From contig BFEA01000029.1 of NCBI GenBank assembly GCA_003427395.1, positions 3,148,041-3,196,906 of the forward strand: a stretch of 48,866 nt of DNA. The letters are read 5' to 3'. Within the stretch, counting starts at the first letter, position 1, and each line of letters starts with the position of its first letter. The position numbers and the translations under genes are program-made. Positions 1,347 to 44,620 of the stretch are shown piece after piece. Source of the stretch: Chara braunii. Lineage: Eukaryota > Plantae > Charophyceae. The notes under the pieces were generated by a model. That model saw only the letters and a list, made by a program, of their open reading frames with translations. It ran no database searches and was not told the origin of the DNA.

Positions 1347-3598
1347 TTACCTAAACAAACTGGAGAAGCTAGAGCTGTCGCTTCCTCCCGAGGGGCACTC
1401 TTCTGCTTCTCGCTTTGAATCCCGATAGATGGGGAAAGGTGCTAACTTCACCTCTTCATCACACTTTCCTGCTCTTATGATCACATCCCCCTCTTCCTCT
1501 TCATCTGCCAATCCAACGGTTCCCCAGTCCTGCATCTCATCCTCTGTCCTATTCATGATCCAAGCATCAATCTCTTTCACCTGCTGCTCCTCATTCTCTG
1601 CCGAACTGGCCTCTCCTGTCTGCTCTCCTTTTGCATCTGGGGACTCACCATCTTTGACTACTTCCTGCTCCCTCAATGCTTCGTCTTCCGCCATAGCAGT
1701 TTCCACCGCTGCCATCTCTTCTTCCTCCTCATCCTCTACCCTGTTACCATCCCCTTCTGCCAACTCCATGCCTTTTACTTTACTTCTGGGAGGCTTCACT
1801 TCTCTGTGAATGCCAGATTTCTCTGCAGGAGGAATAACCTTCCTCTCCACAGCCAAAGTAGTTTTACCACCAACGTCCCCTCCACGTGCTAACTTGCTCG
1901 GCATTGTTCTCGAATGTCCTTTCACTTTCACCTTGACTTCCTTCCCACCAACCATAGACCTGGGTGATCTCCCTCTCCCACCAACCATACGCCCACATTC
2001 TTTCAACCTTCTTTCCTCATTCCCAATGACTGCTGACTTCTTCTTCCCCTCAGCATCCCAGCCACTTACGCCTCCCAAGGAAATCCCCCGTGATCCACCA
2101 TCTTTCGAGACCCTATCTTCATCATACTCTACCTTCACTTTCACATCATTGGTGCCCGAAATGGGGCCTCGTCCCTCTGTCCTCCATTCCAAAACCTTGT
2201 CGGAACCAGCTATACGGCTACCATTGCCATCTTCTCGGTCTGTTCCCCCTTCAACCTCAACCCTACCATCAAGACTGAATGCGTCCCTCCCTGGAGGCGA
2301 ACGGCAGTCCTGTTCTGCGCTCCCCTTGGGACGGCTTCCACTTCTCAAGAGTCGCTGGCGTCCATCTCCCCCATCATCCACAATCTCCGCTTCCATCTTC
2401 TCCTCCACCCTCGTTCCCGTTGACACATCTGGCTTTTTATCAATCTTCCCAAAATCCGCGGGCTTTCCCTTCCTTGAGGTGCTCCCCTTCTTACTCATCA
2501 CGTTACTGTCTTCTACCCTGTAAGGCTCAGCCTTCACTTTGATCTTCTTGGATTCCATCCTTTCCTTCATCATGTCTCCTCCCTTATCCCTTTTAATGCC
2601 TTCTGCTGAACTTTTCTTCACATCCCCCTTCTCTTTTTTCCACTTCTCTAGTGACAATGGCACGGGAGACGCTCTTCCCCCTAATCCATGGATTTTCTCT
2701 CCACTCTCAATTTTTACGTTCTTACTGATATGTGATGGATCTAACGGCTTCAAGCTCCCATATTTTCCAGCGGATGCTCCCTCCACCAACTTCACATGTC
2801 TCCCTCTGCCCTCAGTTTTGGAGTCGACATCTTTTCCTGTCTTAAACTCCCAACTCAACGCCTCTCTGCTTTTCCGAAAATCCTCCTCTTTAACTGTACA
2901 CTCTCCAAAATCCCCTGATTCCAAATGTGTTTTCCTGCCCCCTTTGACAAGGCGGGGAGATTTGCTCGGCCGGTCTTCGCTGGACTTCCAATCCCCGTAG
3001 CGTGGCTCTTCATCCTTCCCCCTCTTTCCTTTTACCCCCTGCGTTTTCTTTGGCTCAAAGGGCCCCAACTTGAAAGAACCTTGTCGCTTTATGACCGCTG
3101 TATCCTTTGCTTTCCCCGCCTCCTTCCCTGCTACCTCCCATTCCATTTCGCATAACTCGCCCCTCATTGTGGGGCTTTTCCGTTCCGTCCTCTGCCTGCT
3201 TCGTACACCTTGCCCCAAATCTTGTACTTCAGGACTGTCTGTTATTTCAGCTGCTCGCCCTGTAACCTGTCTTGAAAGCCCTTTCATTGTGTCCCTGTCA
3301 CTGCCCCCACCACCTCCCCCCTCCTGCCCCTGCCAAGCGTTCTCTCTGACCTTTCCATCTGTCGTCTCCTTGCCCTTCCCTCCATAACTGCGTTCTGGAC
3401 TGACAATGCGTCTAGGACTCCTGATTCCGAGCCCATGCGTCTCCTGCTTCGTCATTGCTTGCTCGTCAGCTGCCCCTCTATCACCCCTCCTTTCAGTGCC
3501 TCCTGTGCCTGAATCGGGTGAAGTAGCCATTGCTCCTCTTGAAGGAGTCAAACCATCCTTTCCACATTGTGAGGGTGGTGCGCTGCCGTAACTTTCCC
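1347..3598 (-). CDS. Large 3' exon: ~750-aa K/E/G/R-rich disordered tail with an acidic end
   Basis: Within the 758-aa ORF 1347-3623; tttgcag| phase-1 acceptor at 3599-3601; ends at TAA 1347-1349, which overlaps a possible AG|GTAAC donor. Confidence 0.8.
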
Positions 3599-6500
3599 CT
3601 GCAAACCATTGGCAATGCCACACACCGATTATGTCACGAAATGAACATGGTACACTGTTATGTCACGAAATGAACATAGTACACTGCCACAAGCAGCGTA
3701 CATGCCGTAGAGGAAAAAAAGACAATCAAATGTCAAGTTTCCCCATTAATGAAATGAATGAAACAAATAAAACTACAAAAAGGAAATAGAAAGACCCACT
3801 CATCCTTCAAATGAAGCAAAGAAAAACTTGTCCGCCTTTCCCTTGAACTGCCAAAGCATCATCGTAGCCCCATGGATGACCCAAATCACCCTCAGAGTCA
3901 CTTTCACACAGTGAATTGAACAATTACAGAGGCACACACAACAGTTACGACCAAGAACTTGGAATCCCTATAGCGGAGAACCGCAACAGCAAAAAACCGT
4001 CCATTAGCATCCGGGGGCCTCTCCTACCAGCCAGTCAAATAGTAAGTTAGTCACTACTTGCAAGCACCTCCAATAAACAGAATTGGATACAAGGAGCATT
4101 GAGGCAATGTTTGCAGCAATAAGGATCAAATTTGGAAAAGAAATTCCTTCGCCATTCAAACGTCATCCAGATTGTGAACATTGATGCCAGCCGTTCTCAC
4201 ATATAATACACATGTATACATGCTTCCGCAGGTCCCCAGGCGTGCCTCATGATTGCAGGGAAGAGACGCACGGTTAACGGAGGCGGCCTGAAATTTTCAT
4301 AGATTTTCAATGCCGTTCATAAGAAAATCCGAAAGGCCTTTTGAACCAAACTTGCCACTGATTCACAAAAGGAATGTGTAAGCACACCGAACGAACTCAA
4401 ACCTGGCCTCCATATCTGGTTCAAGGAGCCATCCAATGAGAACAGAAAACTTTTGAGATCCATCAAAAGCTCACGGAAGACCGTTCACGAATAAACCGAG
4501 TTCAAAGAAGAATTACAAAAGTTGAGAGCACACCAAATCGAGAACACACACTGAACACTGAAGTCCTTTGAGAATCGGCCAACTTTTCCCATGCGGCCTT
4601 CTTGAGGGTCGCCAAGGCCTGCAGCCTCACACTGGAAGAAACATTCTCCAAACAGCTATATATCATGCCAGGAATGGCTACTTACATAAATGATATTGCA
4701 ACAGCTTCATATATTATACATTATCACATATCTATCGACTAAAAGAGCACACTTTGCGAAGCAAATGAAGAAAATGGCAGACAACACTGAGACCTCGTTT
4801 TTGCCTTCTTCTGTGCAGTTCTTTTCTTTCCTTATTTTGACTTTTTTCTTCTTTCAGCCCCCTTCACTGTGCGTCTCGTGTACAAGGCTCGCCATGTCGA
4901 TTTAGTCCAGTGTGAGGTGCCCACATCCCTGTGCGCCACAGGCGCTAACCAAGGCCACATTCCTGCAACAAACGTGGGAACTTAACAGACAGAACAGATG
5001 GGGGCAAGAAGAAAGGAGCCGCACACTAGAACTTCTTTTTTTCCCTTTTTACTTTTCCGTGTGTTTTCGACGTCTACTCAGGTCCAGGGTTACCCACTGT
5101 GGTTGCCATTTCTGATTCCGGTGCGAGGTTCACCCACTTACATGTCATCAAACAGGAGATGCCACACAACAGTCCATTATAAAGAGCAACCTTGCAAGGA
5201 CTGAGGATCACATGATGATGAGACAAACCTGCCCGTGAGGCGGCGTGAGAGCCTTCGTCAACTTCAAGTGGAAACTTCACCTTTGATCTCAGGCTTGATC
5301 TTTGACTTCAGCAACTTTTGACTTCAAAAAAATTCACAAGCGATGGCGTAGCAACACCCATCCTTGGATGCCATCAAGTATGATGGCTTTAATAACACCC
5401 ATCCTTCGATGGCGTCAAGTACGATGACTTTAATACTTCAACGCACATTCAAACTGGCAGGTCCTCCAACCACTTGTGGAGGCCGGACAAATGTGTTACG
5501 CTTTTCAAATATCCCAAAATTGACTAGCGAATCTGGGTTGTGTGTGAGCAGAAAATAATCGAAATGGCCAAAAAGCCCCCAATAACGTTAACTGACCTCG
5601 TTGTTGAGAAGCCAAAGTCGTTTGCTCAACCGGCACACTGGGTACGTCAGACTGTTTCCTTTCATCTGAGGTCTGAAAAGATGGTCTTCCTGCAGAATGC
5701 CTGGGAGAAGCTCCTGATGGGCAAGCAGCAGGCTGGGACTCCATTTGCCTAGACCTGTTTAGGCCACCAAGGGGTGGTCGGTCACATCGCCAACCAAGTC
5801 GACTCCTCTGCACCATGTATGGAAACACAAGAATCAATGATTCATGCCAACAGCAACAGACTAGCATTTCATGTTCCAACCTGAAGAAAACACTCGAGGG
5901 CACCCTTACACAAACCCTTCTTTTTTCAAAATTTAGAAACAGAGTATTATATGTGCTGGAAACCGGGTCGAGCGTCCCTTACACCATGACCCACTCAATG
6001 TTCCCTTCCACAAACCCTTGTCCATGCAAAACACACAGATCCAATATCTCTGCAACCACTGCTACAGTTGTTGGCAGTGCAAGGCAAAGGTGAGTGATAG
6101 AACAGCCAGCAGGACAAGATCAGCTTTCGCACTCGTGATACACCACTTCAGGACCCCACGTTAGAGCGGGTTTGCTCGTGATACACCACTTCAGGACCCC
6201 ACGTTAGAGCGGGGTTGCTCATTGCCATCGCATGACAAACAACAGTCTCAACGGGTCCATTGTCATTTCCTATTGTTTGCTCAAACACAATTTTCATTGT
6301 CATGAAAAGCATGCCGTTTGGGCTTGAAACCGTTACGACTCAATTTGATGGGGAAACCTTGCAAGCCAGCTTATTGCCACTGAGATGTTGCTACTACAAT
6401 AGCGCTTTGTAGTATAATAACATTATTTTTTTCACAAGCAGGGAAGAAAACAAGAGCCACAACACTAATACTAACCCTCACCAGCCGGTCATTCCAAATG

Positions 6501-9500
6501 GGGCCAAGACTACAATACATCCACTTACCTTATGCAGCGACTACCACATTGCTGGTAGGTACTTTCATTCCACTAAAGGACTCAGGATATAGCAGGTGTT
6601 TCACACAGCCTGAATCAAACACTTCCCATAACCAGAATATACCACTTTGTTTCTGCACATCCAGAACCTGCAGAGTGTGGAGACGATGATTCTTGGCATA
6701 GACAAGCAGGCCACGACTGCTGCTTTGTGGTCTGTTTGTCTGCCAAATAGAAAATTCAGTTCTCCCTATCTGTTTTCAACTTTCCATGGTCTTGCGCCGT
6801 TGTTGTTCTGCTTTCACCTCTAATACCAAAACTGGACAGTCGTGCCAACCTTGGCAAGGAAACGAAGCAGATGTTAGAAACAACACATCCGCAAAGCCGT
6901 GCAAAGAGGAAAACAACACAAAACCCCTGAAAGCATGCCACGGTTATGGCACGGTGTTATACTCAACTTGTGAAAGGAAAACAGCAAGGGTCAATTGACC
7001 TCCAAATTGATGCACCTTCTTAGAGGTCAACCCTCGGCTATTGCCTTCTAGGTTATTGCTTGCACTAGTTTTTTTCTTAGTGTGTTCAGACTGGCATGAT
7101 GCTTCATTCATACCTGCAACTACAGCAAACAACAGAGTATATTTATTCTAAAGATTGAAATCATTGAATGCTGCTATTTTTTTATTTTTATTTTTTTATG
7201 CTGCTTTTTGCTTTTTCAAAGGAGACCAAGTCCATCGGAGATCAAAAGGAAGCGGAAGACACAATGGAATATCTTTGTTAGATTGTCAGCAGCACCTAAA
7301 CAAGGCACATTCTATACACTCGTTCCTCTGCAGCACGTGGAAACTTCACAGGGATGCGTGACCGATCTTTTGTGACTGACAGAACAGGCAAGAGCTACAC
7401 CACTGCTCAGTTTTCACCACGTTCTAATCCAGCAACACCTGAGCTTCGTAGCAATCCAACTCGTCAAGTGCCTTGTGAGGCGTGACCAACGGAGAAAACA
7501 TTTTGAACACATATTCATCTCACTTACTTGGTTCTGAAGAAGATCACGTGGTGTAGGTTGAACACCCGGAGGGGGTGGCTCATCCCCTGGCGGTGGCGGT
7601 TCTCCATCATCTTGCTGCAGGTTCCCTGCTGCTGCAGCTGCTGAAGCATGAGGCAAGGGAGGTGCAGGTGGCATGACCGGTCTCCCCATTGGCAAGGGAG
7701 GCTGTTGATGATTACCCGGTGGAAGAACTCCCCGTCCATCTCCACTGTAACAACCACCAGTATCATGCCGTTGCCAACCTCCGTCTGCCCATCCACCACC
7801 ATCCCATCCATGATCCTGTACCAGACGAGCAAGATTGACCAAACCACATCAGCAAGCATCATATGCTCAGATGGGTGTCATTCCACAATTGTCGATTCTC
7901 ATGCTTGCACCCCTCCTGTCTCCAGTTCCCAGCTCTTACCAACCGTCCAGAATACCAAAAAAGTCAGAAATTTAAAAAGCGACGTTATCCTAACAACGTG
8001 TTCACAGTAGTCAAAAAGCAACACTATACAACAACAGTCCATCCACCGCAGGTGCACTTCGTGATTCATTATGCGTGCCTGCTATAAGTGTACTCTGCGC
8101 AATTCATTACCCATGCCAGCTCCAAGTGCACTTGGCTATTCATTGCCTATGCAAACCCAATTGCAAGTGCCCTTTGCTATAACTATTGCCTGTGTCAGCG
8201 GCACCATAGGTGCACCCCTATGGTGCCGCTAGTAATAGCGTATCCAAAAGAGCGCAAACTCGCAAAAAATTGATCCCGAGCTCAAACTCGCAAAAATAGA
8301 TCCACAACGTGTGTCAAAATTGCGTACCTGCACTACCTGATCCTTGATAAGCTGGCTGTGCTTTCTACATTCTTTCCTGTGTGCAGCTGTTTCAGGCTTG
8401 GAGTTGGATTTTAATTTCTAGCCTCGACAAAACGAGGACAGCAGAAAGATTCCAAACCAGGCTGATTGATCCATCGTTTTTAGCACTGTTTCGTATTGCT
8501 GTGATTGAATTGAAGCTCCGCTAACACAACAAGGAAGATTGACATCACTACACCATGATTTTGCATTAAACCACCAGTACCTCCTAAAAGTGCTCCGCGT
8601 TAACGGGCGTGGCTTTTGAGATGAACGGGCCTGGGTCGGTAGGCCCTATTCAGCCAAGTGGAAACGGCACGACTTCCACTTTTGGCTGGCCGTTAACGCG
8701 GAGCACTTTTAGGAGCTACTGGTGGTTTAAGAAACATGCGCAAGAAAAATTACAAGCGTGCTGGCAAGGTCCTGTAACTTCAAATGGAGGCGATGGGTGC
8801 AATGGACATTACAGTTGGCTCACTGGGAACATCAAGAGGAAGCGCGCTACCCACCATGCCTGCAGCTGGAGGGCCGCTGAATCCATTGGCCATGTTGCTT
8901 GGTCCATTATATCCTCTGTGGTTGCTGTGGGCAGGAACGGCTGGCACAATTGCCCCAGCGACAGGTGCCGGGGCTGCTGCATGAAAATGATTCATAAAGG
9001 TCAGTCGCTATCACGGACAAGAAAAGGAAACCTCATCATAGCAGCAATGTGGATGGATCAATTAATATCCGAACGGCTGCCAAACAACCAGATCGCCCAC
9101 CCGAGAACATACTAGTCTGTGTAACAGTAATATGGATGAACAATACCAGGACAGCTGCCAGACACCCAGACAAGGTGTAGGTAACCAATCCCTAGTGGCC
9201 TAGCCCCCAAAAAAAGTCGAAACAGATGTTCGAAAGGTTCACAATTGTTACATAGCATGTTAGGAGATTACCCAAGGAAAACTTTACTTTAATCACTGCT
9301 ACGATTCACTTCACCACAAATTGAAACCACTTTCCCAATACACTTAACTGGAGGTAGTTTCCCACAGACTGTGATTAAAAACCAGAGAGCAGACCCAACA
9401 ATGACTACCACTGTGACACCAAAATGGCACATGTCCAAAAAGAGGGATGGGGGGAGGGGGGGGGAAGGGGGGAAGAGGAAAAGTCCGAAAAGACCTTAAG

Positions 9501-9590: not shown

Positions 9591-12500
9591 GTTCAACAAG
9601 CCTGTTTATTGTGGTTGCTGCACTGCAGCTGCAGGTTTGGGAGGGGAAAGTACAATAAGCCTGTTTATCACTGTAGCTCCACCTGTGCAAGAGAACAGCA
9701 GAACAGATAGAGCCGGGCTGCTGGTTTGACGACCAAGCAGATTTGTGAATGATGTTTGTCATTATTCAATCAGACTGTAACGAATTGCCTTGTCACCAAA
9801 GGGCACCAGCAGATCTGAGCAAGAAGCCAGCAGCCAAATGTTCCATCCACGCATGCCGAACCTTTTTTCTCCTCCTTCCCCGTTGCAATCCTCTTCATAT
9901 GGGCAGTGGTTCGGCAAACTTCATCCGGCATGCCTCGTGTGTTCTTATCCATGCATTGTCATGACAGTCATCCTCCAGATTGTTGCTGAGCACCTCTAGA
10001 GGATGACTACCTTCTTCCCCAGAACATAACGCATATGCCTTGTATTCGAGTTTCAAAATTTGAAAATAAAATCGAATAGAACGTGTATGCGTTGTATTCG
10101 AAAATTTGGGCTATTCGAATAGAACGCATGGGCGTTGTATTCGAATAGAACGCACCCTATGCGTTGTATTCTTTTACAATGCATATGCGTCATGTTTGGG
10201 GGAAGAAGGTAATTGTTTGGCACGAATGCCAGACTGTGACCATCAGCACTTCAGGGCATTTGGGGTTGCCAAGGAGGGCACGCTTGCGATTCAGGGCGCC
10301 ACCTCCTTGAGCCTTCCTGTTTTCCTTGTACCCTCAAGGATGACAGAACAAATACAATCCCTTCTCATTGCACCCAGCATGAAATTTCAACGACATATAA
10401 ACATAGGCCCAGGTGGTTGCATGCTTTCACGTTAAAAAATGCACAGGAGGGACTTTACCATTGACATAGGCAGGAGCAGCTGCCCGCTTTGCCAAGATTC
10501 CGAGGAGTGAAGGCACCCCACTTCGTATGTCCATTGTAGTTCCAACTTTCAAGAATTCATCAAGTCCATCCAGAGCCGCTTGTTCTTCCATTCGGCTCAG
10601 TTGCTCCCGCACTCTCCTGCCGTGTAATCAAGTGGATAGAGGAACATGGAAAAAATAAGCAAGTTCCGTCATTTGACGAGGAGAATGTATTAAATATAAC
10701 CAGGCAGCGACTGAAACACGAGTCATGAGTGCTAGGCCATTTGCAGATTGTCCGTCCAATACCCTCGAGAGAGGGAAACTCGTACTCTCAAGTTTTTTTT
10801 ACCCAAAGAACAAAACAACACCGGCAAAAGGCACACAGAGCATATACACAGGGTGTCCACGAGCGGGTGTTGTACCGTGTCTCGGCTGGCGTCCATTTGC
10901 CACTGCTGTGTTCATCAACTTGCCCAAGAGGGGAGGTTGAGCTCACATAAGTCGCCTTGGCTCATGTGCCCTCATCCACGACTGAAGGCGAAATTTATTG
11001 TTGACACTGAGGGTGTACTCACACTACCACTGGGCTCTGGGGCCAGGAGGCATAGATGGGACTTCGACCACCACTATCTCCGAGCCTCTTTGTTGCCGAG
11101 GCGGAGTAGAACTGCATGCCAAGCTTTGCCAAAGCACCAGCGCAACCTTTTTTCTTTACATTTGGCTGTCGCCGCCAGCCACTTTGCTCTGGCGCCCGGC
11201 CTCCAAATAATGCGGTATACTGGGTATAGGCTATATTTATGACTTAGCCTTCCACCCTGAAAGGTGATGGTGTTTTAGAGGGGTATAATAACTATGAATA
11301 GGGGCACCTTAAAAAAAAAATCATTTTGACATTTTAGCAATTTAGTTTTATTTTTCTTGAGTTTGGCTGCTGAACTTTAACTTTGGCTTTGGCAACCATT
11401 TTTTTATTTTGACGATTTCGTTTCCTTGGGCTGGCCAACATTTTCTTTCAGGCTAATTTTTTCCAGACTTTTTTAGCTTCATGAATTTTCTTATTTGCAC
11501 TGGGCCTGTCCTGCTCCTCGCCGGGAGCTTGCCCAGCCGGGGTGCCCACCCAGCTCCCAAAGTCTGGGTCGCATTGCTCAAAAATTGAAAGGGGCGTCCA
11601 CAGGGCAGGTCCATGCATGTGGTTAACCTCGGGTGTTATTTCGCCAAATTTTGCACCGACACTGTCATTTTGGCTATAGATTCTTTGCTTTTCTTCTTGT
11701 TTTTCTTTCCGTGTGATGAGTAGCTGCTTTTAGAGTACGTCGTGTATTCAGTTTTGACATATTTGGACTAACAGAGAAAAAAGTTCAAAAAACATGTCGT
11801 TGAAATCGTTGAACGCTTTCGCATTAGGGTTCAATAGTGCTCTTGTTTTTTTTTCTTCGTTTTTTTTTCGCCTGTTTCAATAGTGTTCGTACTGTGGGCA
11901 CATATCGTTCGTTTCTCAAAGTCTTTTTCACTTGTGGTGACGCTGCAAAAACGGCGAATTTTTTACCCTCGGTTAATCACCTTCAGGATCACCCAACTTT
12001 AAATACCATCTCACCCACCTTCTTCACCTGAATACACGTATGGTCATTATTACTACGTATTTGGACTGAAAGATAACCCAACACCTATAATGACTGTACT
12101 CTGCATTTTGGGTGAAGACGATAGGTAGTAGCCATTTTTGCCAGGAGTTCATGTGTAGAAGGATGGCACATGATCTCTGTAATAGCAAAAGCACTCAAAG
12201 AGTCAAACATATTCATATCCAAATGGGCACTCGTCATTACATGAATAAAATCTAAACCATTTCTTGTCATTAGCTTATTATCAGTATAAGTAGCAAAGAA
12301 ACTGCGAGGAAGTTGAACATTACATGGGATCGCCCTGGACTTGAGATCCTTTGCCAGCTAGGCATCCACAATTGCTACACTTGCACGCATTTGCGCAGTA
12401 CAAAATACTTACTGAAACAGGTCACAATTCATTCACAATGCTCAAACATCATGTCTGCATTACCATTATAAATACGATACGCTGCTTGTTGAAGGAATAA

Positions 12501-13950
12501 ATGAGACACACCGTCAGGTGTTGTTACCAATACAACTCTTACAGCAACGATCGACTGCAAAGCAATTGTGACTAGAATCCCGGAACACAGCAACCACCCA
12601 AAGGCAAGCAAAGAGAAATGTGTGGAGCACAACACAAACAAAGTCAAATGCCCATTTGTGGCCAGCTTACCGATCTTCCACAATCTCTCTACGGCACCGC
12701 CTCCCATGCACCATCTCGTCGACTCTTCCAGCGACGACAGGCCGCAGCCTTGGCCATCTTGTGCCATGGCCCATCCTGGGCGGTCCGCCCCATCCACCAT
12801 TCATACGACCCCTTCCTTTTTCGTTGTACCAATCACCACCACGATGCCCACTGTATGAGCTCTCAGCTGCTGTCGTCTTCGTCATTTCACCAAATACCGG
12901 AACGGGAATAGGGGCAGGCAGGTGCCCACATGAATAGTCTGGTGCATGACTCGTAGGAACCACTGGAGGCCCAATGATACCTCCTGGGGGTATTGGGAAC
13001 CCACTTTCTCCCCCCAAATGTGGGGTTGCAGTGCTACCTTGACCAACAGGAAAACGAGGATGCACAGGAGGCGGAGGTGGGGGTGGAGGTGGAGGTGGTG
13101 GTGGGTTCACAGCAGGGTGACTATGGCCATTAGGAGTGATTGGCACAGCACTTCCAACAGGGCCAATCCCTGTAGATGTTGGTGGGATGGGCCCATGAAC
13201 CCCTCCAACAAGAGCCCCATGTGCAGGACCAGCTATTTGTCCCATGAATGGGCCAGGAGCACTGGGATGTGGTCCAGGTATACCAACATGACCTTGTACT
13301 TGGCTATCATGTGCAGCTGGAACATGGCTACGATAGGGTACCTGAGGAGGAGGGGCATCCGGAATGTGTGGTTTATGCAGTGCAGCTCCACGAGCCCCAA
13401 CTGGTTGCTCGGGGCCAGCATTGTCCTTGGGAGAACACCTGTTCCTTGGCGGTGAAAGGTCTGCATGGTTCAAACCAGTTTCCTGTGTCCCTCCTTGATT
13501 TTGTTCATGTTTGTCGTCATGCGCAAGCATAGGGGTTCCTAATCCACCTCCATGACCAGTATGGCCAAACCCACTGAAGGAGCCCCCAATGCCACGCCCT
13601 CCTCCCCTCATGGCAACTGCCGCTCCAGAAGCTTCACCACTGGTAGGCACATGTCCAGTAATTGTCCCAGGCCCTGGCCCTGGTCCTGGCCCTGACGCTG
13701 GCCCTGATCCAAGTCCCGACCCCATTCCAGGCCCTGGCCCTGGTCCGGAGCCTGGCCCTGGTCCAGGACCAGGTCCGTTAACAGGCCCCCCTGGGCATTC
13801 CCTGCACATATCTCGTCCATTATTATAGTATCTAAGAGGACGCATTGCATCAGGTGGAAGCAATCCCGTGAGTCGATAATTATCCTCCTGTCCATAACCA
13901 ACAACATACACAGGACCACAGTGCAGCAGTCATGTTAGCATTTTTAGTTT

Positions 13951-25200: not shown

Positions 25201-26400
25201 CATCAATAAGAAAAACATAAGAGCCCTTAATGCAGGAAAGGGTGCTCAGCTATGCCACGAACCTTGCTGGATGGAAGTAGTCACACTCATGACGGAGGCA
25301 CATGCCACGGGTCAGCATATCAAAGCAGATGCGTCGCGACCGATCAAATCCCCCAGAGAAGTTTCCTCCTCTATCTGCCAATCTCACATCCCAGTCCCTT
25401 TCTCGTTCCCTAAACCCTACTCGCTCCCTCTCCCTTTCTCTATCCCTTTCCCTCTCCCTCTCTCGGTCACTCCCTCCACCCAGCCTGTCCTGGGGACGAT
25501 CCATGTGTCGATCCATGACCATCCCATGCCTCTCCATCCGACCACCCTCCCACTCATGCCCATAACGATGCATTACGGGACCACCAGCTGCTGCAGGAGC
25601 CAGGCCACCAGGTCCAGGACATGGCCCTACTGTACTCCCCCCTGCAACCATCTCGCCCACAGATCCACCACTAGTACCGCCACCTGCCACTGTTCTTGGG
25701 CCACCACCACTTAAAACAGCCCCATTTCCACCACCAACCAGGCCACTTTCAGGTACATTGCAGCCACCTCCCGTTCCACCACCATTAGTGCCAGCAGCTC
25801 CACTCACGGCAGAATTCACACCACTTGAAGAAGGGACATGACCATCACGTTGCTGCTGCTGCTCCCTATGATCACGGAACTGGCAGAAGACTGAGCTGCT
25901 ATTGGAAGTAGGCGGTCCATGTTCCCATCCTGGAGCATGAGGAACTTCTCGAGGAGATGATGGTCTTCCAGTTGGTGGCCTGCACAATCCGTGCGACAAG
26001 GAAAGACAGCACCACTTATGTTATGATGACTAATAGCCCGCATGACGGTATACACGGGAAGACGAAGAAGAACAAAATAGACCCAGTTCTTTGAATAAGC
26101 ACCCTGAATGTCGTTGGTCGTTGGACATGGAAACCCGAAGCAGAACAAAACAGCAGCTCCAGCTTGGGATTTGCAACCAGTCCTCCAGGGTGCCCACCAA
26201 GAGATCCGAAAGACCTGCATTATAGTTGGGGGATGGCGGTCATTCCCCTTCAACCATTTCCTGCCACATGTCCAACCTTATCTGAACAATCCCACAATAA
26301 CACCACAGCTCTTGTAGCACATCGGATATGTCTAAACTTTGTTTGCCCCAGAAAGAGCACATCTCCCTCCCTCCCTCCCTCCCTCCCTCTCTCCACATCT

Positions 26401-26531: not shown

Positions 26532-26668
26532 TAGCTTTCCCATGTGCACTCTTGCCCTCTTTCAACCCTTCCATTCCCATTCTCGGCCCTCCCCCACCCT
26601 TCTACCCCACTTCCTTCCTCTCCATCTACCCCCTGTCTCTTATACACATCTAGATGTGTATAAGAGAC

Positions 26669-26721
<53 letters not shown>

Positions 26722-32700: not shown

Positions 32701-35700
32701 CAGGCACAGGGAACATAACGCAGTTCAATGGGCATGGTCCTAGGGATTATCCCAGTTCAATGGTCTGAGCTCTTGTGCCGTAAGCCAGAAAGAAAGAAGC
32801 CAGTAGCATGAGATCTTTAACATTACCAGCTAATTTAAGCCTGCATCGATGTTTGCCACGCTTATTTCGCACATATATTCCAACGAGTTACGAGTTCATG
32901 AATGTCAACACTATCATTGAGCTAGATCACATATCAAAGCAAGGAGGGGGTGGGAACCCATAATAGGTTTTCAGTGCAACTTTTCAGATGACTGTTATGG
33001 TGGCTACCTTACCGTGTACCCAAGGCGATTGTGCAGATTTTCCAGAAGCTGCAACAGATAGTTATAGTCGGGTTCGTCGTGAAACTCGAGCGCACGAAGA
33101 TACCTTGCAAATGACTGGAACGCAAAAAACATTGGCACAGTAAGTAATTGCTCCTTCTAAGTGCAGTCCTTGACTAACATTGGCATCTTCTAAATTCCAG
33201 CTTTCCTAGCATAATTGATACTATTTGTACTGTTTCCAAGAATATTGGGCAAGTTATGCCAACTAGCTCAATCAGTTGTCAACTAAATTAGTGTCAAGAG
33301 CTTAAATGTTTGGAAGCACCATTGATTGCAAAAGAGGTAAACACCAAAGGTAGGAACATAGCAAAATGAGGTTCCATCCACACTCACGGGTTACGAGATG
33401 AAGCACCACATTATCCATCGTCAGTCCTGCTGAAGCACTTCATGAAATTACAATCAATTTGCGCCGATTAGATGTCACACAGAGAAACCTAAACCAGGGA
33501 GGCAACATGAGTAACAGGAAAGGCATATATCCACACGACGAATCCACCTGACAAGGCTGAAAGCACTGTAGCAACAACGTTGTACATGGCAGCTGAGAGT
33601 AACGTACCAAAAGCTCCTCTGGCAGTTCAATAGTCTTCGTCAGCAGGTGAGGATTCTTGTTAAAATGAGCTTTCAAGCCACGGACTTTGTCCTGCACAGC
33701 ACAGGAATAGACACAGACGATTGGGATCGTTGCCCGACCTCAGAAACCCACCAGAGGAAATGCTTGCTCTAAGGTTCCACTCCCTCACAGAAACATTCTC
33801 ACCACAATGCAGCAATGCCAGGCATCAAGCAGAGAATGCATCATCATGCTCGCTAGGCATGTTCCGACTCCATCACACGTGTGTGGAGACACCAAGTGCT
33901 TGCCCCTTCTGTCACCTGGAGCCCTGCTGAATGCATGAAGGGTTGTGCAGAGTTGTCGGACCCTGCACAAGTACATCCGATGCGTTGCAATAACATGGGA
34001 TGCTGATTGAGATGCCTTGCTGTCCATTGGTCACTGCAAATGTCATTGTCAGTCCACTCATATCATTGTCAGACATTCCAGTTTCCGCTAATGCTGCATC
34101 TCTGATTCATCCTTGGGGCAAGTTGACGCTGAAGAACATGCAAGGGCGTTATGATTGGCACAAGATTCAATCACTTCCCATCACTTCAAACTCTTGTGCA
34201 ACCCAGAGATTGAACCCACGCTCTCAATTGCAGCTCTGAAAAACGGTTTTCGGCACACATACAACTCGTTATCACTTGAGGAAAACTTTCCAAAAGAGAA
34301 GAGATGGAGACATGACCGATTTGCACAAAAATCTCCGGAAAAAGCCCTCAATTTCCCTTACTCAATCCACCAAGGTACCGGACACACAGTCCACAATCTC
34401 CCGGTCTACATGCCTACTATATCAAACGTTCTGCCCTCCTGTCTGCATGGTTTCCGGCGAAGCCGGCCTCCCTACTCGATGCTGCCAGCTCAAACTGAAC
34501 TGCCAAACCAACATCAACAATATTTTTTATCATGTTGTCTAGGAACGTTTTTGGGACCGAGTCACCACAATGCGACCAACACACTAGCCACCAGAAACAC
34601 CACACAGGTTCAAATCCTGACGTCCAACCAACAAAAACCCAAAACACGCGCAAGCGGCACACCAGAGATCGAATCCCGGCTGCTTCACTCAAGCTGCAAC
34701 AACAAACAAGAAACTCGGGATCAAACCCCGGTGATCCAAGCAGAGGGCCTCCTCATTTTCACAGTAGCAATCCCAATCGGCCCAGATTTTGCAGTCCTCC
34801 ACTACCCGGCACCAATGCTGGACTTTGTCCAGCTCAACAGGTCAGCTCCGGATGTAGTGGTGGTTTAAGGCACCTGGATAGCACTGCTGCTGGGCCATAG
34901 TCTCATGCCGCCTATCCACCATCCAAACGTCGGCGAGCACCCAAGCACAGAGGTATTCTGGGCATTGTTTTTGGAAATCCAGGTCACCAGGCTGCTTGCG
35001 TCTATAGACTTCTGTACCATACTCACGGAGTGACGAGCCAGCTCTACCCAAAACCCACCCCCGGGCACGTGTGGGTGCCAAAGGGTGGGTCCACGTCAGT
35101 ACCAGTTTCCCTGTCACATCAATAGGTACACCCATTCTACACAAGCACCCTCCCATGTGGCCAGGCAGTGACTGGTGACCGCGCGCTACCGTGGTTACGT
35201 GGCACCATATTTCAATTATTTTGGGAGTCCAAAAAAAAGCAATCCAAGCATCCAATGACAATGCCAACCAGTCTTTCAATAAATCCACGAGTAATATTTT
35301 GATATTCTTTCGAGTCAGCAGCTCATCATCTTGTGCATTTACCTTATCTGATGAAGTTGACCTCCAAGGTAGATCACCTTCTAGAAACTCAACGAGTACA
35401 TATAGTAATGACCACAAGTCATCTCGCCGTCCGAGGTCCTGAAAGGGGTAAGAACGTATCCAACAGTTAAAATAAGCTATTCAGTAACAGGCTTAAGTAA
35501 CAGGCAGGCAGGCATCGACCATCCCAAAAATGCATTTTAATCATCGAAGCTTCTGCTATTCAGGTTAACAAAAGGCGTGAACTGGGCAATAGAAGGGAAT
35601 GCTGCCACCACCTTCTCCCACTCTGTTTGTCTGGACCAGGTTCAGAACCTATGTTGGGTATGCTACTATACTCTTTTGCGACTCCCGTTCTTTATCATTC

Positions 35701-36629
35701 AGTCGTTGCTGCAGATGTAAGAATACGGACCAGAGGTCTTCTGTCGCCGTGAAATATGCAACAGCAATTCCAAGCAAGGCTGAATTTCCGGTCCCACCGG
35801 GGCCCCCTTCCCCAACCGGAACCGGGCCGGTGGTACCGGCCGGTGGAGAGCGCCGGTTCCCCCCTGGTGGAAATTTGCGCACTTCGACGGGGGGGGGGGG
35901 GCGTTTCAAATTTTTTTAGGGCCGGTAGGCCTCCATGCGGGTCGTGGAGGCCTCCCGGCCCCGAAAAAAAAACAAACCGGGTCCTGTTGGCCCGCCAGAA
36001 TGCTCAAAAACTGGCGGCCTATCTGGGCCGTCGATCTAGTCAGATCTGCGGCCCAGATAGGCCGCCAGTTTTTGAACATTCGGGCGGGAAACCGTCCGGA
36101 GTTCTTGGAGGCGAACAACGATCCCCAAGCACAGGCCCAACCTCCCCGCCTCCTGCCTCTGCTTTCGAACAACCATCCCCAAGACCCGTCACTTCGACAC
36201 TTCGTCGAAAGTGAGCGAGGTCGAGAATGCGTCGCCCTCCCCCAAGTCCATCTGCAAGCCGTCAGCCCCCCCACGTCAACCCCCCCCACGTCAGCCCCCC
36301 CCACGTCCGCCCCGGCCAAGGATCGACATCGCCCCGGCCCGCCGTCCATTGGTAACGGTGAGTCTGTCTGTTTCTTCTTCTTCGTACTACCTCCTTCTTC
36401 TTCTTCTTCTATTCTTCTTCTTCTATTCTTCTTCTTCTATTCTTCTTCTTCTATTCTTCTTCGTCTTACTATCTCCTTCTTCTTCTTCTTCTTCTTCTTC
36501 TTCTTCTTCTTCTTCTTCTTCTGGCAGAGCCGAAGTCCGAAGTTTGCGAAGTAGAGAGAGAGAGAGAGAAGTAGTGGGCGCGCGTGGAGGAGGGTAGTGG
36601 GCGCGCGCGGAGGGTAGCGGGCGCACGCG

Positions 36630-36713
<84 letters not shown>

Positions 36714-39611: not shown

Positions 39612-39682
<71 letters not shown>

Positions 39683-42600
39683 GGGTAGTGGACGCGCACA
39701 GAGGAGGGTGGTGGGTGTGTGCCCACCATCAACCCATGAATTTCGAACCCCCCCCCCCCAACCCCAGGAATTTTTTTTTTGCAGATCACTGTTTCCTCTG
39801 CGGATTCGGGGAGATCTCGACAAGCGCAGTCCAACCCCATCATCAGAAATAAAAAATAAAAATAAATTGACCCGGTTTTGGCCTCAACTGGATTTCCGGT
39901 TGGACCACCGGGGTTCCAACCGGCCGGTGGCCAGTGCAGCCCTGATTCAAAGGTTAAAAATCGATAAAAATATGGAACTCTGTTGAGCTCTGCGTAAGAA
40001 CATTTTTTATGTTCTACAATCTACATAGTGCTGCACAGGCTCAGCCTCAAGAACATCATCTGTACGCTAGAGGTGCATCCAGTCCACTCAGACTGTGCAC
40101 TAGGCTGTAGAACTGTTGAGGCCTGGCCCTGAGAGGCAGGCTGGGTCAAGCATCCCAATCAGGCCATACCATTGTGAATCCACAGCCCTTTGCTGTGGGA
40201 TTACGATGCCAGACACAAGGGGCCGTAATTAGGAATCTCTAGGGAATATGGTGTGGCAATAGGCACGGACTAAGTATGCCCTATCTTCACATAGTATTTG
40301 GAGCAACTGTAGGTAGGCACGGACTAAATACGTACTATCTACACATAGCAGACAACAACAAAATCAAGCCATACTCCACTGTAATGAGGCGAAGGCACAG
40401 TACAAGTTCAGTTCTACACTCAAACTTTGATCTTAGTCATTTACCTTAAAACATAGCCTAGTCCCTGGCCCAGTTTCTGTGCGCGAGCACAATACAAGGT
40501 GCTATTGGTATGCTTACAACTATTTCCTCGAGTCATACAAGATGTTATTGGTAGCAATATCAATTCCACAGAGCCATAAAAAATGCTATTGATTTATAGC
40601 CCTGAAGGGCCTGAACCATACAAACTCCTACTGGCACCGGCATTTGTTCCCCTGGAGCCATTCCGGATGCTATTAATCCCGATATCTATTCTTTACGAAA
40701 GTTAACCAGTGGACTGTCCTTCCTTCATCTTTTTGCCAACTGACCTTAACAGGGCTCTGCATCCATATAGTCTGGCCGTTTCTCTGTTACAATGATCGCT
40801 TGTACCATGGCACCAGGGTGCCCTTCTCATTTCCTGTTGTACACTGGCTCTCTAACCCCTTCTCTAACACTGGCTCGGTCGGGGGTTTCTGGCTCTGCAG
40901 AGTCTGCACCCATATCGTCTGGCTGTTCTCTGTTACAATGATCGGTTGGACCATGGCACCAGGGTACCCTTTTCATTTCCTGCTGTACACTGGCTCTCTA
41001 ACCCTTTCTCTGCGCTAAAGTGTTCCTCAAGGTGGAGAGGGGCAGCAGTTGGTCTGCTGCAGGAGGACAATCGCAAGGCAACAGTGCGTAGGAACAAAGA
41101 TAACAAACACAACGGAAAGTATATGGTTTCCGATCTAAGGAGACCGTTAGTGTTTGTGGGAAACACTTCCGTATTATATTAATTTAGCACTGCTATTACC
41201 TATGTTTGCTATTCTTTTCTGCAGACGTAGCTTCTCTTTTTGTTTCTAAAGGTCTCCCAAACATACCAACAACGAAAATTCTCCAGAAATTGGTGTAACA
41301 CTTCGCATCAACCTCTCAATAGCCAATTTGGCACATGTATACATGTTTCTACGTGGCAGCCGTCTTTCTGATGATTGCTAGCTTTTGTTGTTGACTTTGA
41401 TATAAAATATTCCTTCTGAACGAAACACTACGGGGTATTACCAACATGATTCAATACAGGCAATGAGAGGCTCCTCCCCAACTATTTACCTACCAGGCCC
41501 ACCTCCTCTTTCGAGCAAGGGTACCATATAATTGCTCAGCATTCCTTCTGTCATCACACACCACTAACTGCAGTCCAACCAAGTTATCACCGCAAAAGGA
41601 AAGCTGGGGATGTCACAGCTATTCAAACCCGAGGCCAAAACAGAGAAAGCATAAACAAGTTTGCAATGCAACAACGTAAAGAATTACGAGGCAAGGGTGG
41701 TGGAGCAAGGTCGGAGAGAAGTAGTGATTGCACTGACCTTGCACATATGAGCATTCACAGAAGCATATGACGATGTACCCCTGAATTCAGCATTATCTCT
41801 TGGCGCCACTATCTCGCCTGTATTTGTCTTGTAGCGCCTGGATAATCCAAAGTCGATGATGAAACATTGTCTCCGTTTCGGACCATAGCCCATGGCAAAG
41901 TTGGACTGCAAAGAGAAAAGAGGAAAAAGGCCAATCCGCATCGTTGGACATTGCGAACGATAACACGTTCAGTGCACACAAAGAACCAGGGCCGATCCTC
42001 TTCCCTCTCAAAGCCCACAACCGTTCTTTACTTTTTCCTGAACCAAAACAATCCTTAAAGTTTTTCTGGTGTTTCTTCATTGTTTCACTGCACTGGCTTG
42101 AAGCTCGTGAATGCACAGCACATTCATCGACAATCAAGAATAACAGGTGAGTGTCATTCCCAAGAACAGAAATTTGACGAAAGACCAGGCAAAACTCCTT
42201 CCCCTTCAGGTCACGTTCACGAATCTCTCGAGTCTCAACCATGGTTCAGAAAGGGATTGTCAAGAGCTCAAACGGTTGAAAAGAAAAGTCGACCAGTTAA
42301 TGCAGGGAAGAAGCACAAAAGGTGGCAAGGATAGCTCATGGCTATCAACCAAGGCCAACATCCAGAGGAGCGTGTCAATATCCATTTTCGCGGCACAACT
42401 ACCTACACATGGTCAAGCTCCAGGGGTTGACGACAAGGTACACAGTCACAGTAAAGGCAACAACCATGGGGAAGCGCTTACAAGGGCTCATCTCCGATCT
42501 CATCCCGGAAAAGTAAGGGAGTCAACCAACAAAAGTGAGGGAAAATAGAGAAGGATCCACACACCATATGGAATCTATCTGAACACTATGAGCCCCATCT

Positions 42601-44370: not shown

Positions 44371-44620
44371 ACTGTGTGATATTTTATTTGAACATCAAGC
44401 TAGATAATATACAAAACTTGACAACGGCATCTGACTGACAGTAACTGTAACACCTACAAATAAGAACTCTGCAACGTCTAAAGGTGCAAGGATCAAAGGC
44501 TAACAACATTGAAAACAACAGGTGAAGATTAATGCTCGGCACTCTAATACCAGAACTCACCGGTTTCACATCACGGTGAAGATAACCAAGCTCATGCATC
44601 CCTTTGATGCCCTTCAGTAG
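1347..44620 (-). CDS. TTBK: 5'-partial multi-exon gene: TTBK-family kinase with two CCCH zinc fingers, an hnRNP Q/R AcD/NURR-like domain and long disordered tails; join(44561-44620,41738-41905,35343-35438,33608-33691,33013-33114,32234-32307,25263-25979,15462-15561,12671-13887,10459-10616,8855-8976,7528-7815,5597-5807,1347-3598)
   Basis: All 14 exons have AG acceptors and the 13 internal ones have GT donors. Intron phases are compatible (0,0,0,0,0,2,2,0,2,1,0,0,1) and the total of 5649 nt is divisible by 3 with no internal stop. Motifs [48 protein letters not shown], EPDY and YDWD match TTBK/CK1 kinases. Confidence 0.8.
3630..3687. repeat. 29-bp tandem duplication just upstream of the last exon's acceptor
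   Basis: TATGTCACGAAATGAACAT.GTACACTG occurs twice. Confidence 0.85.
5597..5807 (-). CDS. Exon: RSRLGWRCDRPPLGG...TTLASQQR(G)
   Basis: gtgcag| acceptor and |gtcagt donor; 211 nt, phase 0-1, the phase needed to reach the large 3' exon; no homology support. Confidence 0.62.
6133..6220. repeat. 43-bp tandem duplication
   Basis: CTCGTGATACACCACTTCAGGACCCCACGTTAGAGCGGG occurs twice. Confidence 0.9.
7528..7815 (-). CDS. Exon: DHGWDGGGWADGGWQ...PPPPGDEPPPPG...LLQNQ (GW- and Pro-rich)
   Basis: gtacag| acceptor and |gtaagt donor; 288 nt, phase 0-0. Confidence 0.82.
8570..8726. mobile_element. 157-bp MITE with 37-bp TIRs, flanked by TTAA
   Basis: ACCACCAGTAnCTCCTAAAAGTGCTCCGCGTTAACGG arms (36/37 identical) at 8570-8606 and 8690-8726; TTAA at 8566-8569 and 8727-8730. 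Confidence 0.85.
8855..8976 (-). CDS. Exon: AAPAPVAGAIVPAVPAHSNHRGYNGPSNMANGFSGPPAAGM
   Basis: ttttcatgcag| acceptor (followed by a second CAG) and |gtgggt donor; 122 nt, phase 1-0, bridging both neighbours. Confidence 0.75.
10010..10209. mobile_element. Tc1/mariner (pogo-like) MITE with TA target duplication
   Basis: TA|CCTTCTTCCCCAGAACATAACGCATATGC...GCATATGCGTCATGTTTGGGGGAAGAAGG|TA; internal GAATAGAACG..GCGTTGTATTC repeats. Confidence 0.8.
10459..10616 (-). CDS. Exon: RVREQLSRMEEQAALDGLDEFLKVGTTMDIRSGVPSLLGILAKRAAAPAYVN (second half of the AcD/NURR-like domain)
   Basis: cggcag| acceptor and |gtaaag donor; 158 nt, phase 2-1; amphipathic helical pattern. Confidence 0.82.
12671..13887 (-). 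CDS. Exon: EDNYRLTGLLPP, GP-repeat/poly-Pro disordered region, RG-rich patch and first half of the AcD/NURR-like domain
   Basis: ggacag| acceptor and |gtaagc donor; 1217 nt, phase 0-2; lies inside the 414-aa ORF 12667-13911. Confidence 0.85.
13954..14919. repeat. (CT)n microsatellite followed by an assembly gap (N 14026-14919)
   Basis: Directly visible. Confidence 0.95.
15462..15561 (-). CDS. Exon: CCCH finger 2 (VCERASSLCLDFISGKCRNRAAECARYHWSLEE)
   Basis: ttgcag| acceptor and |gttagt donor; 100 nt, phase 2-0; C-x7-C-x6-C-x3-H at 15477-15536. Confidence 0.85.
16286..16475. repeat. ~95-bp tandem duplication
   Basis: CTAGGTGGCATGTTGTTGCATTG...GACCATTCACATCATCTTTGCTG.GACACC occurs twice. Confidence 0.9.
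16751..16877. repeat. ~70-bp tandem duplication
   Basis: TTCTCCTTATTCTTCTCCACCTAATGCTAA...CACACCCTCTTC occurs twice. Confidence 0.85.
17366..17529. repeat. Compound (CT)n-(CA)n-(A)n microsatellite
   Basis: Directly visible. Confidence 0.95.
19056..19519. repeat. (GA)n tracts, gap (N 19131-19330) and duplicated AGGCATGGCAGCACAACGTGTGACAAGAGA units
   Basis: Directly visible. Confidence 0.9.
20056..20330 (+). mobile_element. tRNA-derived SINE-like element or tRNA pseudogene head (tRNA-Ala-like) with downstream body
   Basis: Pol III A box TAGCTCAGTTGG (20063-20074) and B box GGTTCGATTCC (20107-20117); TGGCATT loop; anticodon and acceptor stems mispaired; 3' limit approximate. Confidence 0.55.
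20903..21431. mobile_element. Degenerate non-autonomous element with GCCGACC subterminal repeats and a G-rich core
   Basis: Imperfect ends GCATACCTGCC / GTCAGGCATGC; its right end (GACCAGTAGGTGCC...CAGCTGGTCGG) recurs at ~14987-15055. Confidence 0.45.
25263..25979 (-). CDS. Exon: Gly-rich and RE/RD-rich region plus CCCH finger 1 (CFDMLTRGMCLRHECDYFH)
   Basis: gtgcag| acceptor and |gttcgt donor; 717 nt, phase 2-2, fitting both neighbours; C-x8-C-x4-C-x3-H at 25271-25327. Confidence 0.85.
26633..26670. other. Nextera mate-pair junction adapter (assembly artefact)
   Basis: Exact CTGTCTCTTATACACATCT+AGATGTGTATAAGAGACAG (Tn5 mosaic ends back to back); flanked by a duplication of ~26464-26632 at ~26671-26820. 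Confidence 0.98.
28235..28330 (+). repeat. G-rich minisatellite of ~10-bp units (GGAGGGTGGT/GGAGGGTAGG)
   Basis: Directly visible tandem array. Confidence 0.85.
32234..32307 (-). CDS. TTBK: Exon: HDQLYDWDVEESAPAALAPPAPLS(R), end of the kinase domain
   Basis: gggcag| acceptor and |gtgagt donor; 74 nt, phase 0-2; supplies the conserved (F/Y)DW that ends CK1/TTBK domains. Confidence 0.88.
33013..33114 (-). CDS. TTBK: Kinase exon: SFARYLRALEFHDEPDYNYLLQLLENLHNRLGYT
   Basis: ttccag| acceptor and |gtaagg donor; 102 nt; CK1-family LxFxxxPDY motif; absent from the ORF track. Confidence 0.92.
33608..33691 (-). CDS. TTBK: Kinase exon: DKVRGLKAHFNKNPHLLTKTIELPEELL
   Basis: gtgcag| acceptor and |gtacgt donor; 84 nt, phase 0-0; continues the CK1-type C-lobe. 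Confidence 0.9.
35343..35438 (-). CDS. TTBK: Kinase exon: [32 protein letters not shown]
   Basis: cctttcag| acceptor and |gtaaat donor; 96 nt, phase 0-0; GRxDDLWSLxY and LPWR motifs. Confidence 0.95.
35776..37023. mobile_element. GC-rich non-autonomous DNA-transposon-like element or composite, ending ...GGCCAGTGCAGCCCTG
   Basis: CCGG-rich subterminal repeats, internal long hairpin, TTC and GA tracts; the last ~300 bp recur at 39682-39944; left boundary uncertain. Confidence 0.5.
36004..36075. repeat. Inverted repeat with perfect 27-bp arms and an 18-nt spacer
   Basis: TCAAAAACTGGCGGCCTATCTGGGCCG (36004-36030) pairs with CGGCCCAGATAGGCCGCCAGTTTTTGA (36049-36075). Confidence 0.9.
37024..37560 (-). 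mobile_element. Decayed LINE ORF2 fragment (post-RT region)
   Basis: Translation LKAWRHMMPS...KEEALRQPLFCNPWIKDPDGLPW resembles the AW...P...EE.L.QPLF.NP.I motif of plant/algal L1-type LINEs; interrupted by stops. Confidence 0.55.
37646..37757 (-). pseudogene. Orphan exon of an ABCC/MRP-type ABC transporter, NBD1 region (NATIQDNILFGKSMDPQKYEQVIRACALEKDLSHFPAG)
   Basis: Matches the ABCC NBD1 consensus QNATxxDNILFG...YxxVIxACALxxDLxxxPxG; has cag| and |gtac flanks; no other ABC exons recognised in the window. Confidence 0.75.
38700..39140 (+). mobile_element. Decayed LINE ORF2 C-terminal fragment
   Basis: VWFQLLRKLTLWTIWKRRC matches the W..lR...lW.iW..R(C/N) motif near the end of L1-type ORF2. 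Confidence 0.55.
39682..39944. repeat. Direct-repeat copy of ~36727-37023 (transposon end rc CAGGGCTGCACTGGCCACCGG)
   Basis: Near-identical sequence, missing a ~28-nt internal segment; both copies follow a (GA)n tract. Confidence 0.85.
40752..41011. repeat. ~145-bp tandem duplication
   Basis: TCTGTTACAATGATCG..ACCATGGCACCAGGGT..TGTACACTGGCTCTCTAACCC occurs twice. Confidence 0.85.
41738..41905 (-). CDS. TTBK: Kinase exon: [56 protein letters not shown] (DFG and activation segment)
   Basis: ctttgcag| acceptor and |gtcagt donor; 168 nt, phase 0-0; SNFAMG and FRGTxxYASxNAH are TTBK-type motifs. Confidence 0.95.
42592..42880. repeat. Imperfect tandem duplication, ~160-bp period
   Basis: GCCCCATCTTCAAGT.CTCACAGACGTTGGTAGCAC...TTCAAAGCTGAACAC..T.ACAATAGC occurs twice. 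Confidence 0.85.
43738..44368. repeat. (CT)n, gap (N 43796-44180) and (CA)n
   Basis: Directly visible. Confidence 0.9.
44561..44620 (-). CDS. TTBK: Kinase exon: LLKGIKGMHELGYLHRDVKP (catalytic loop)
   Basis: gtgcag| acceptor and |gtgag donor; 60 nt, phase 0-0; HRDxKP motif. Confidence 0.95.

What the first reader, a model, noticed from the sequence alone, without database searches (positions are those of the whole stretch)
1347..44620. TTBK kinase fused to tandem CCCH fingers and an hnRNP Q/R-like domain: a candidate RNA-binding tau-tubulin kinase
Seen: 14 phase-compatible exons join a TTBK C-lobe to an RE/RD stretch, two CCCH fingers, a GP/poly-Pro region, an AcD/NURR-like helical module, a GW/Pro-rich exon and a charged tail. 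Known: animal TTBK1/2 have a kinase plus a largely unstructured tail and act in ciliogenesis and in tau/TDP-43 phosphorylation; I know of none with CCCH or hnRNP Q-type RNA-binding domains. Inference: this kinase may be targeted to RNA or RNP condensates by its own domains, coupling CK1-type phosphorylation to RNA processing.
Basis: partly seen in the sequence, partly recalled or inferred. Interest (0 to 1): 0.85.

Follow-up and report, generated by a model that had tools for sequence, protein, structure and literature searches.

The report
Green-algal kinase with RNA-binding domains
This alga makes a tau-tubulin kinase that carries two zinc fingers and an hnRNP Q-type domain of the kinds that bind RNA; the same undescribed design occurs in other, distantly related green algae, so it may be a kinase that is steered to its targets by RNA.

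Summary
The fusion is real and old. RNA reads and spliced contigs from three studies join the last kinase exon (32234) to the zinc-finger exon (25979), and that exon to the next across a gap. All three gaps and a Nextera adapter artefact lie in introns. The kinase is TTBK-type.

The same kinase plus tandem CCCH design occurs in Klebsormidium, Spirogloea, Closterium and the chlorophyte Cymbomonas. Klebsormidium and Cymbomonas also carry the hnRNP Q acidic/NURR-like domain. Klebsormidium shares nine intron positions and encodes the kinase end and first finger in one exon. Homologue profiles match Muscleblind fingers and Syncrip NURR first, at modest scores.

Two corrections: the N-lobe lies upstream, and the 'stop' at 1347 is probably a conserved splice donor, so the protein likely continues. 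Databases call these proteins hypothetical or generic kinases, and I found no paper on the architecture; TTBK was reported absent from Chlamydomonas and Arabidopsis. RNA binding and substrates are inferred, not shown (about 55%). The scan had noted only the NURR part before, on this same window.

The parts
44561..44620 (-). E1: kinase helix E and catalytic loop (HRDVKP); N-lobe exons lie upstream, outside the window
   Evidence: same intron positions in Klebsormidium and Cymbomonas
41738..41905 (-). E2: SNF, DFG, activation loop, FRGT; TTBK-type
   Evidence: best solved relative TTBK1 E 1e-13, CK1 about 2e-8
35343..35438 (-). E3: LGRRDDLWSL helix F
33608..33691 (-). E4: kinase C-lobe
33013..33114 (-). 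E5: kinase C-lobe (EPDY)
32234..32307 (-). E6: YDW end of the kinase domain; phase-2 donor spliced to E7
   Evidence: RNA loose ends
26633..26670 (.). Nextera mate-pair junction adapter with a duplicated flank: assembly artefact inside intron 6, no effect on the exons
25263..25979 (-). E7: Gly-rich linker, RE/RD stretch, first CCCH finger (C-x8-C-x4-C-x3-H)
   Evidence: both edges shown by RNA; Pfam zf-CCCH_10 E 4.5e-5, below its cut-off; homologue profile
15462..15561 (-). E8: second CCCH finger (C-x7-C-x6-C-x3-H, RYHW)
   Evidence: start shown by RNA
12671..13887 (-). E9: conserved EExxYxxxGxLP extension of the fingers, Gly/Pro-rich region, first half of the NURR-like domain
10459..10616 (-). 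E10: second half of the NURR-like domain
   Evidence: intron at the same position in Klebsormidium and Cymbomonas
8813..8976 (-). E11: Ala/Pro-rich exon, edges uncertain
   Evidence: frame and splice scores only
7528..7815 (-). E12: GW/Pro-rich exon, edges not tested by RNA
5597..5807 (-). E13: short exon needed for phase, edges not tested by RNA
1351..3598 (-). E14: long charged low-complexity exon ending in the conserved S[DE]SxSFSxLF motif and a probable phase-2 donor at 1351

Best explanation
One gene encodes a roughly 2,000-residue (or longer) TTBK-family Ser/Thr kinase of a green-algal subfamily that arose before chlorophytes and streptophytes split. Shown: single spliced transcript across the kinase-finger junction, TTBK-type kinase with intact HRD and DFG, conserved tandem fingers and NURR-like domain in distant algae. 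Inferred mechanism: the Muscleblind-like finger pair and the NURR-like domain bind short motifs in RNA; the RE/RD, RS and Gly/Pro-rich linkers hold the protein in RNA-protein assemblies (splicing speckles or mRNA granules); the kinase then phosphorylates Ser/Thr clusters of neighbouring RNA-binding proteins and of its own tail. RNA binding would thus do the targeting that CEP164 and EB binding do for animal TTBK2 (that comparison is from memory).
For: Junction reads and contigs. Architecture in Klebsormidium GAQ87395.1, Cymbomonas KAK3237924.1, Spirogloea SM000426S15719 and Closterium GJP61473.1. Shared introns; kinase end and finger 1 in one exon in Klebsormidium. The finger profile's top six PDB hits are five named MBNL1/2 chains plus one unnamed chain (2E5S), best E 6e-4. 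The helical module's profile and predicted fold hit Syncrip/hnRNP Q first (E 0.007; TM 0.73; Z 10.7 against 7.8 for the best unrelated chain). All eight zinc ligands are kept in five species. The arginine matching RNA-binding R60 of Syncrip (PMC5827114) is invariant in three species, and the window keeps the G97 match (numbering transferred by eye). RE/RD and RS runs flank the fingers. No SxIP motif in E7, E9, E11, E12 or E14. The gene is kept in Zygnematophyceae, which lack flagella (own knowledge).
Against: No binding, localisation or activity data. Pfam hits for both domain types are below the curated cut-offs. The G97 position is Leu in Klebsormidium and Asn in Cymbomonas, and G97L was part of the double mutant that abolished RNA binding. 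The aromatic residue before the last ligand that stacks on bases in MBNL (from memory) is not invariant in finger 1 and is shifted in finger 2. The finger order is the reverse of an MBNL pair. NURR is missing from the Spirogloea and Closterium gene models. The finger-pair structure prediction failed (pLDDT 52).
Confidence: 0.55

Rival explanations
1. The gene is the same conserved fusion, but the fingers and the helical module act as protein-docking modules and the kinase keeps a cytoskeletal or basal-body role like animal TTBK2.
For: The Syncrip domain was first described as a protein-interaction module (PMC5827114). RNA-contact positions are only partly conserved. Cymbomonas, Klebsormidium and charophytes have flagellated cells (own knowledge).
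Against: Retained with both fingers in non-flagellated Spirogloea and Closterium. Two unrelated RNA-processing-type domains plus RE/RD and RS runs in one chain. No SxIP motif. TTBK not found in flagellated Chlamydomonas (PMC6743461).
Confidence: 0.25
2. RNA acts as an allosteric switch rather than an address: the conserved S[DE]SxSFSxLF tail motif is an intramolecular substrate or inhibitor, and RNA binding releases it, as in PKR or GCN2.
For: The motif is conserved in four species inside an otherwise unalignable tail, 0 of 20,000 shuffles carry it, and among 388-395 fetched kinases only these green-algal proteins have it. CK1-family kinases are autoinhibited by their phosphorylated tails (own knowledge).
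Against: No biochemical data. The motif could equally dock another protein.
Confidence: 0.15
3. Two neighbouring genes, or a misassembly at the Nextera adapter, only look fused.
For: A 6.3-kb intron with an adapter artefact separates kinase and fingers; junction read counts are small (3 and 4 reads in one raw run).
Against: Spliced junction in raw reads and in contigs of two further studies, zero depth in the flanking intron; one-exon continuity in Klebsormidium; four homologues with the same order of parts.
Confidence: 0.02

Closest known systems
Tau-tubulin kinases TTBK1/TTBK2 and Asator (CK1 group)
   Same: Kinase domain: best solved relative; falls on the TTBK side of the TTBK/CK1 split, 100/100; long low-complexity tail.
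   Different: No CCCH or NURR match in any fetched animal, amoebozoan, euglenid, cryptophyte or glaucophyte TTBK (388 proteins scanned); no SxIP motif in the tail exons checked; reported absent from Chlamydomonas and Arabidopsis (PMC6743461).
Muscleblind (MBNL1/2) tandem CCCH fingers
   Same: Top PDB hits of the finger profile; one finger with x6 and one with x4 spacing.
   Different: Order of the two finger types is reversed, finger 1 has x8, a conserved RYHW plus EExxYxxxGxLP extension follows, and the fingers are attached to a kinase.
Syncrip/hnRNP Q/R NURR (acidic) domain, PF18360
   Same: Profile and predicted fold of the homologues match it first; the R60 match is invariant.
   Different: No RRM follows it; scores are below Pfam's cut-off; the G97 match varies between species.
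Kinases or kinase folds with their own RNA-binding parts: PAN3 (CCCH plus pseudokinase), UHMK1/KIS (UHM), PKR (dsRBD), GCN2, CDK12/13 (RS domain); recalled from memory, not tested
   Same: General idea of a kinase domain joined to an RNA- or RNP-targeting module.
   Different: None is CK1/TTBK-type and none, to my knowledge, combines tandem CCCH with NURR.

Membership tests
TTBK (CK1 group) | Kinase domain closer to TTBK than to CK1 | tested here: met
   TTBK1 E 1e-13 vs CK1 delta 2e-8; tree 100/100
TTBK (CK1 group) | Catalytic motifs intact (HRDxKPSNF, DFG, FRGT, LGRRDDLWS) | tested here: met
TTBK (CK1 group) | N-lobe with Gly loop and ATP-binding lysine | tested here: inconclusive
   Not in the window; an RNA contig extends about 357 nt upstream; intact in homologues
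TTBK2 (ciliary) | SxIP motifs for EB binding in the tail | tested here: not met
   none in E7, E9, E11, E12, E14; the true C-terminus is probably outside the window
TTBK (CK1 group) | Phosphorylates tau/tubulin-type substrates | not testable with these tools
   needs an assay
Muscleblind-like tandem CCCH | Two CCCH fingers with MBNL-like spacing and sequence | tested here: met
   E about 1e-3, below Pfam cut-off
Muscleblind-like tandem CCCH | x6 finger before x4 finger, as in MBNL pairs | tested here: not met
   order reversed in all five species
Muscleblind-like tandem CCCH | Binds YGCY RNA | not testable with these tools
   needs an assay
NURR / hnRNP Q acidic domain (PF18360) | Sequence and fold match | tested here: met
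   for the Klebsormidium and Cymbomonas homologues; window E10 linked to them by profile E 8.6e-5 and shared intron; window halves alone give no significant Pfam or PDB hit
NURR / hnRNP Q acidic domain (PF18360) | RNA-contact residues R60 and G97 | tested here: inconclusive
   R invariant in three species; G in the window, L and N in the two homologues (numbering by eye)
hnRNP Q/R proteins | RRM domains after the NURR domain | tested here: not met
   no RRM in Pfam scans of window exons E9, E10 and E14 or of the full-length homologues; E11-E13 were not scanned

The most novel reading that the evidence does not exclude
Green algae keep an ancient TTBK subfamily whose activity or substrate choice is set directly by sequence-specific RNA binding through Muscleblind-like fingers and a NURR domain: a CK1-group kinase that reads RNA and regulates splicing or mRNA fate, apparently lost in Chlamydomonas and flowering plants.
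Probability: 0.4. Interest if true: 0.85.

Novelty: new variant of a known kind. Interest (0 to 1): 0.66.

Why it matters
TTBKs are described as a kinase domain with an unconserved tail (PMC6743461) and were not found in the two standard green models. A billion-year-old green subfamily with two conserved RNA-type domains changes that picture and extends both Muscleblind-like fingers and the NURR fold to a kinase. Human TTBK1/2 phosphorylate the RNA-binding protein TDP-43 (PMC4256087), so a natural TTBK with built-in RNA-binding parts offers a direct way to ask whether acting on RNA-protein complexes is an old TTBK role. It is testable in Klebsormidium or Closterium.

Tried and rejected
Two-gene or misassembly reading: rejected. 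Pfam on single window exons gave only sub-threshold hits, and none for the NURR halves; PDB searches with E10 or half-domain profiles were blank or chance. ESM Atlas gave only leads under 0.9. AlphaFold of the finger pair was too poor to search. Metagenome scans found no relative of the finger pair, and none of 80 kinase loci carried fingers or NURR; most of these contigs are short. No land-plant or Chlamydomonas orthologue turned up in three length-limited homologue searches and one 150-hit search; this is weak evidence of absence. The window's own protein did not appear in those searches. The C-terminal helical part of the Pyramimonas paralogues does not match NURR. No convincing exon after 1351 or before 44620 inside the window. 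Nine paper searches found no description of the architecture. Intron 6 (6254 nt) exceeds the 6000-letter limit, so the junction was read from loose ends at E7.

Full report
Gene model. The window holds a minus-strand gene of 14 exons, from 44620 to about 1350, in one open frame of 1895 codons. E1-E6 encode the C-lobe of a kinase. E7 is Gly-rich with an RE/RD run and a CCCH finger, E8 a second finger, E9 a Gly/Pro-rich region, E9-E10 a helical module, E11-E13 short low-complexity exons and E14 a 748-codon charged exon. The organism is not given. The tree and gene structure point to a streptophyte green alga; it looks Chara-like to me from memory, which I did not test.

Gaps and artefacts, tested first. 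All three N gaps are inside introns (E1/E2, E7/E8, E8/E9). The critical 6254-nt intron between kinase and fingers contains a full Nextera mate-pair junction adapter at 26633-26670 with a duplicated flank, which made a false join a live worry.

RNA evidence. I laid two raw oligo-dT runs and spliced contigs from two other studies on 25205-26340. Depth is confined to 25263-25980 and is zero in the flanking introns. Loose ends at the acceptor continue with the 3' end of E6 (3 reads in X21, contigs of X2 and X4). Loose ends at the donor continue with the start of E8 (4 reads, both contigs). First-mate direction fits a minus-strand RNA. The X2 contig has 596 nt upstream of E7 (E1-E6 need 583) and 6133 nt downstream (E8-E14 need 4386). 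The X4 contig has 940 nt upstream, about 357 nt beyond E1, which matches the 117 N-lobe codons of homologues. Expression in the raw runs is low (11 and 21 reads laid). Minor isoforms cannot be excluded, and junctions other than E6-E7 and E7-E8 were not read directly.

Kinase identity. E2 matches TTBK1 at E 1e-13 and CK1 at about 2e-8. In a 50-row tree of the C-lobe the window lies on the TTBK side (100/100), in a green-algal group (91/81, not fully supported). That group also holds two Pyramimonas paralogues without fingers and one long-branch row. The nearest row is Cymbomonas at 63% identity.

Conservation. Searches from E2 outward found the same order of parts in four other green algae. Klebsormidium nitens GAQ87395.1 (2029 aa) has kinase, RE/RD, two fingers, an RS run, the NURR-like domain and the tail motif. 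Cymbomonas tetramitiformis KAK3237924.1 (1082 aa) has kinase, fingers, NURR-like domain and motif. Spirogloea muscicola SM000426S15719 has kinase, fingers and motif. Closterium NIES-67 GJP61473.1 has kinase and fingers. Profiles built only from these homologues hit window E7, E8 and the start of E9 in contiguous order, and E10, well above all other six-frame hits. Finger spacing is C-x8-C-x4(5)-C-x3-H then C-x7-C-x6-C-x3-H in all five. Klebsormidium has introns at the same positions as the window at nine boundaries, and none between the kinase end and finger 1. Cymbomonas shares the intron inside the NURR-like domain. Since Cymbomonas is a chlorophyte, the fusion predates the chlorophyte-streptophyte split (inference). 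No other of the 388 fetched kinases matched either profile.

3' end. E14 ends in S[DE]SxSFSxLF, found only in these green-algal proteins and in 0 of 20,000 shuffles. In homologues the motif is internal and followed by acidic residues, and Cymbomonas has a phase-2 intron directly after it. The window reads AG|GTAACT there. The extra 1747 nt of the X2 contig fit either that or a long 3' UTR, so this is not settled.

What the domains are. The finger profile retrieves five named MBNL1/MBNL2 chains and one unnamed chain (2E5S) and nothing else significant in the PDB (best E 6e-4), with the two finger types in reversed order. The helical module gives Pfam hnRNP_Q_AcD at E 5e-4 (Klebsormidium) and 0.027 (Cymbomonas), below cut-off. 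Its profile ranks Syncrip/hnRNP Q first. An AlphaFold model of the Klebsormidium domain (pLDDT 72) superposes on Syncrip NURR with TM 0.73 and Z 10.7 (for helical domains that Z alone would not be decisive, but three methods agree). PMC5827114 shows that NURR binds RNA through helices 3 and 5 and that R60A/G97L abolishes binding. Transferring numbers by eye, the R60 match is the invariant first residue of E10, and the G97 match is Gly in the window but Leu and Asn in the homologues.

Mechanism. Shown: one transcript, an intact-looking TTBK catalytic core, and long conservation of both modules. Inferred (0.55): the fingers and NURR bind RNA, the charged low-complexity linkers keep the protein in RNA-protein assemblies, and the kinase phosphorylates proteins there. 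Retention in flagella-less Zygnematophyceae and the lack of SxIP motifs argue against a purely ciliary role. Rivals are protein docking with a cytoskeletal role (0.25), RNA-controlled release of autoinhibition through the tail motif (0.15), and two genes (0.02).

Novelty. The homologues sit in databases as hypothetical proteins or generic Ser/Thr kinases, with only kinase domains annotated. Nine literature searches found no description; one study reports TTBK absent from Chlamydomonas and Arabidopsis and unconserved outside the kinase domain (PMC6743461). The held library lacks most subscription papers, so an earlier mention cannot be excluded. I file it as a member of the TTBK family with a new, conserved architecture; it is not a Muscleblind or hnRNP Q/R family member.

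Noticed in passing
window 37647-37757, minus strand: A lone ABCC/MRP transporter NBD1 exon with AG and GT ends sits inside kinase intron 2 (E 2.5e-7 to ABCC3); probably a captured fragment, no neighbouring ABCC exons noticed.
   Followed up: partly
window 45303-45461, minus strand: NADH dehydrogenase membrane-subunit fragment (Pfam Proton_antipo_M E 9e-5), nad4-like by my recollection; probably a mitochondrial insertion upstream of E1.
   Followed up: partly
window 26443-26860: Nextera junction adapter left in the assembly with a duplicated flank of about 150 bases; such reads can create false ORFs elsewhere in this genome.
   Followed up: yes
proteins P0163 and P0194 (Pyramimonas): Short TTBK paralogues in the green clade lack fingers but share an unnamed C-terminal helical segment that does not match NURR.
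   Followed up: partly
proteins P0262 and P0153, last 30 residues: Klebsormidium and Spirogloea share a C-terminal FWxExxGxxKSREL...GKRRR motif ending in a possible nuclear localisation signal; its counterpart would lie outside this window.
   Followed up: no
window 36426-37160 and 39613-40020: Two similar microsatellite-flanked repeat copies in kinase intron 2, seen from matching translations; probably a non-autonomous mobile element.
   Followed up: no
window 25956: G-to-A difference in 4 of 5 reads of run X21, absent from the other runs; probably a strain allele.
   Followed up: no
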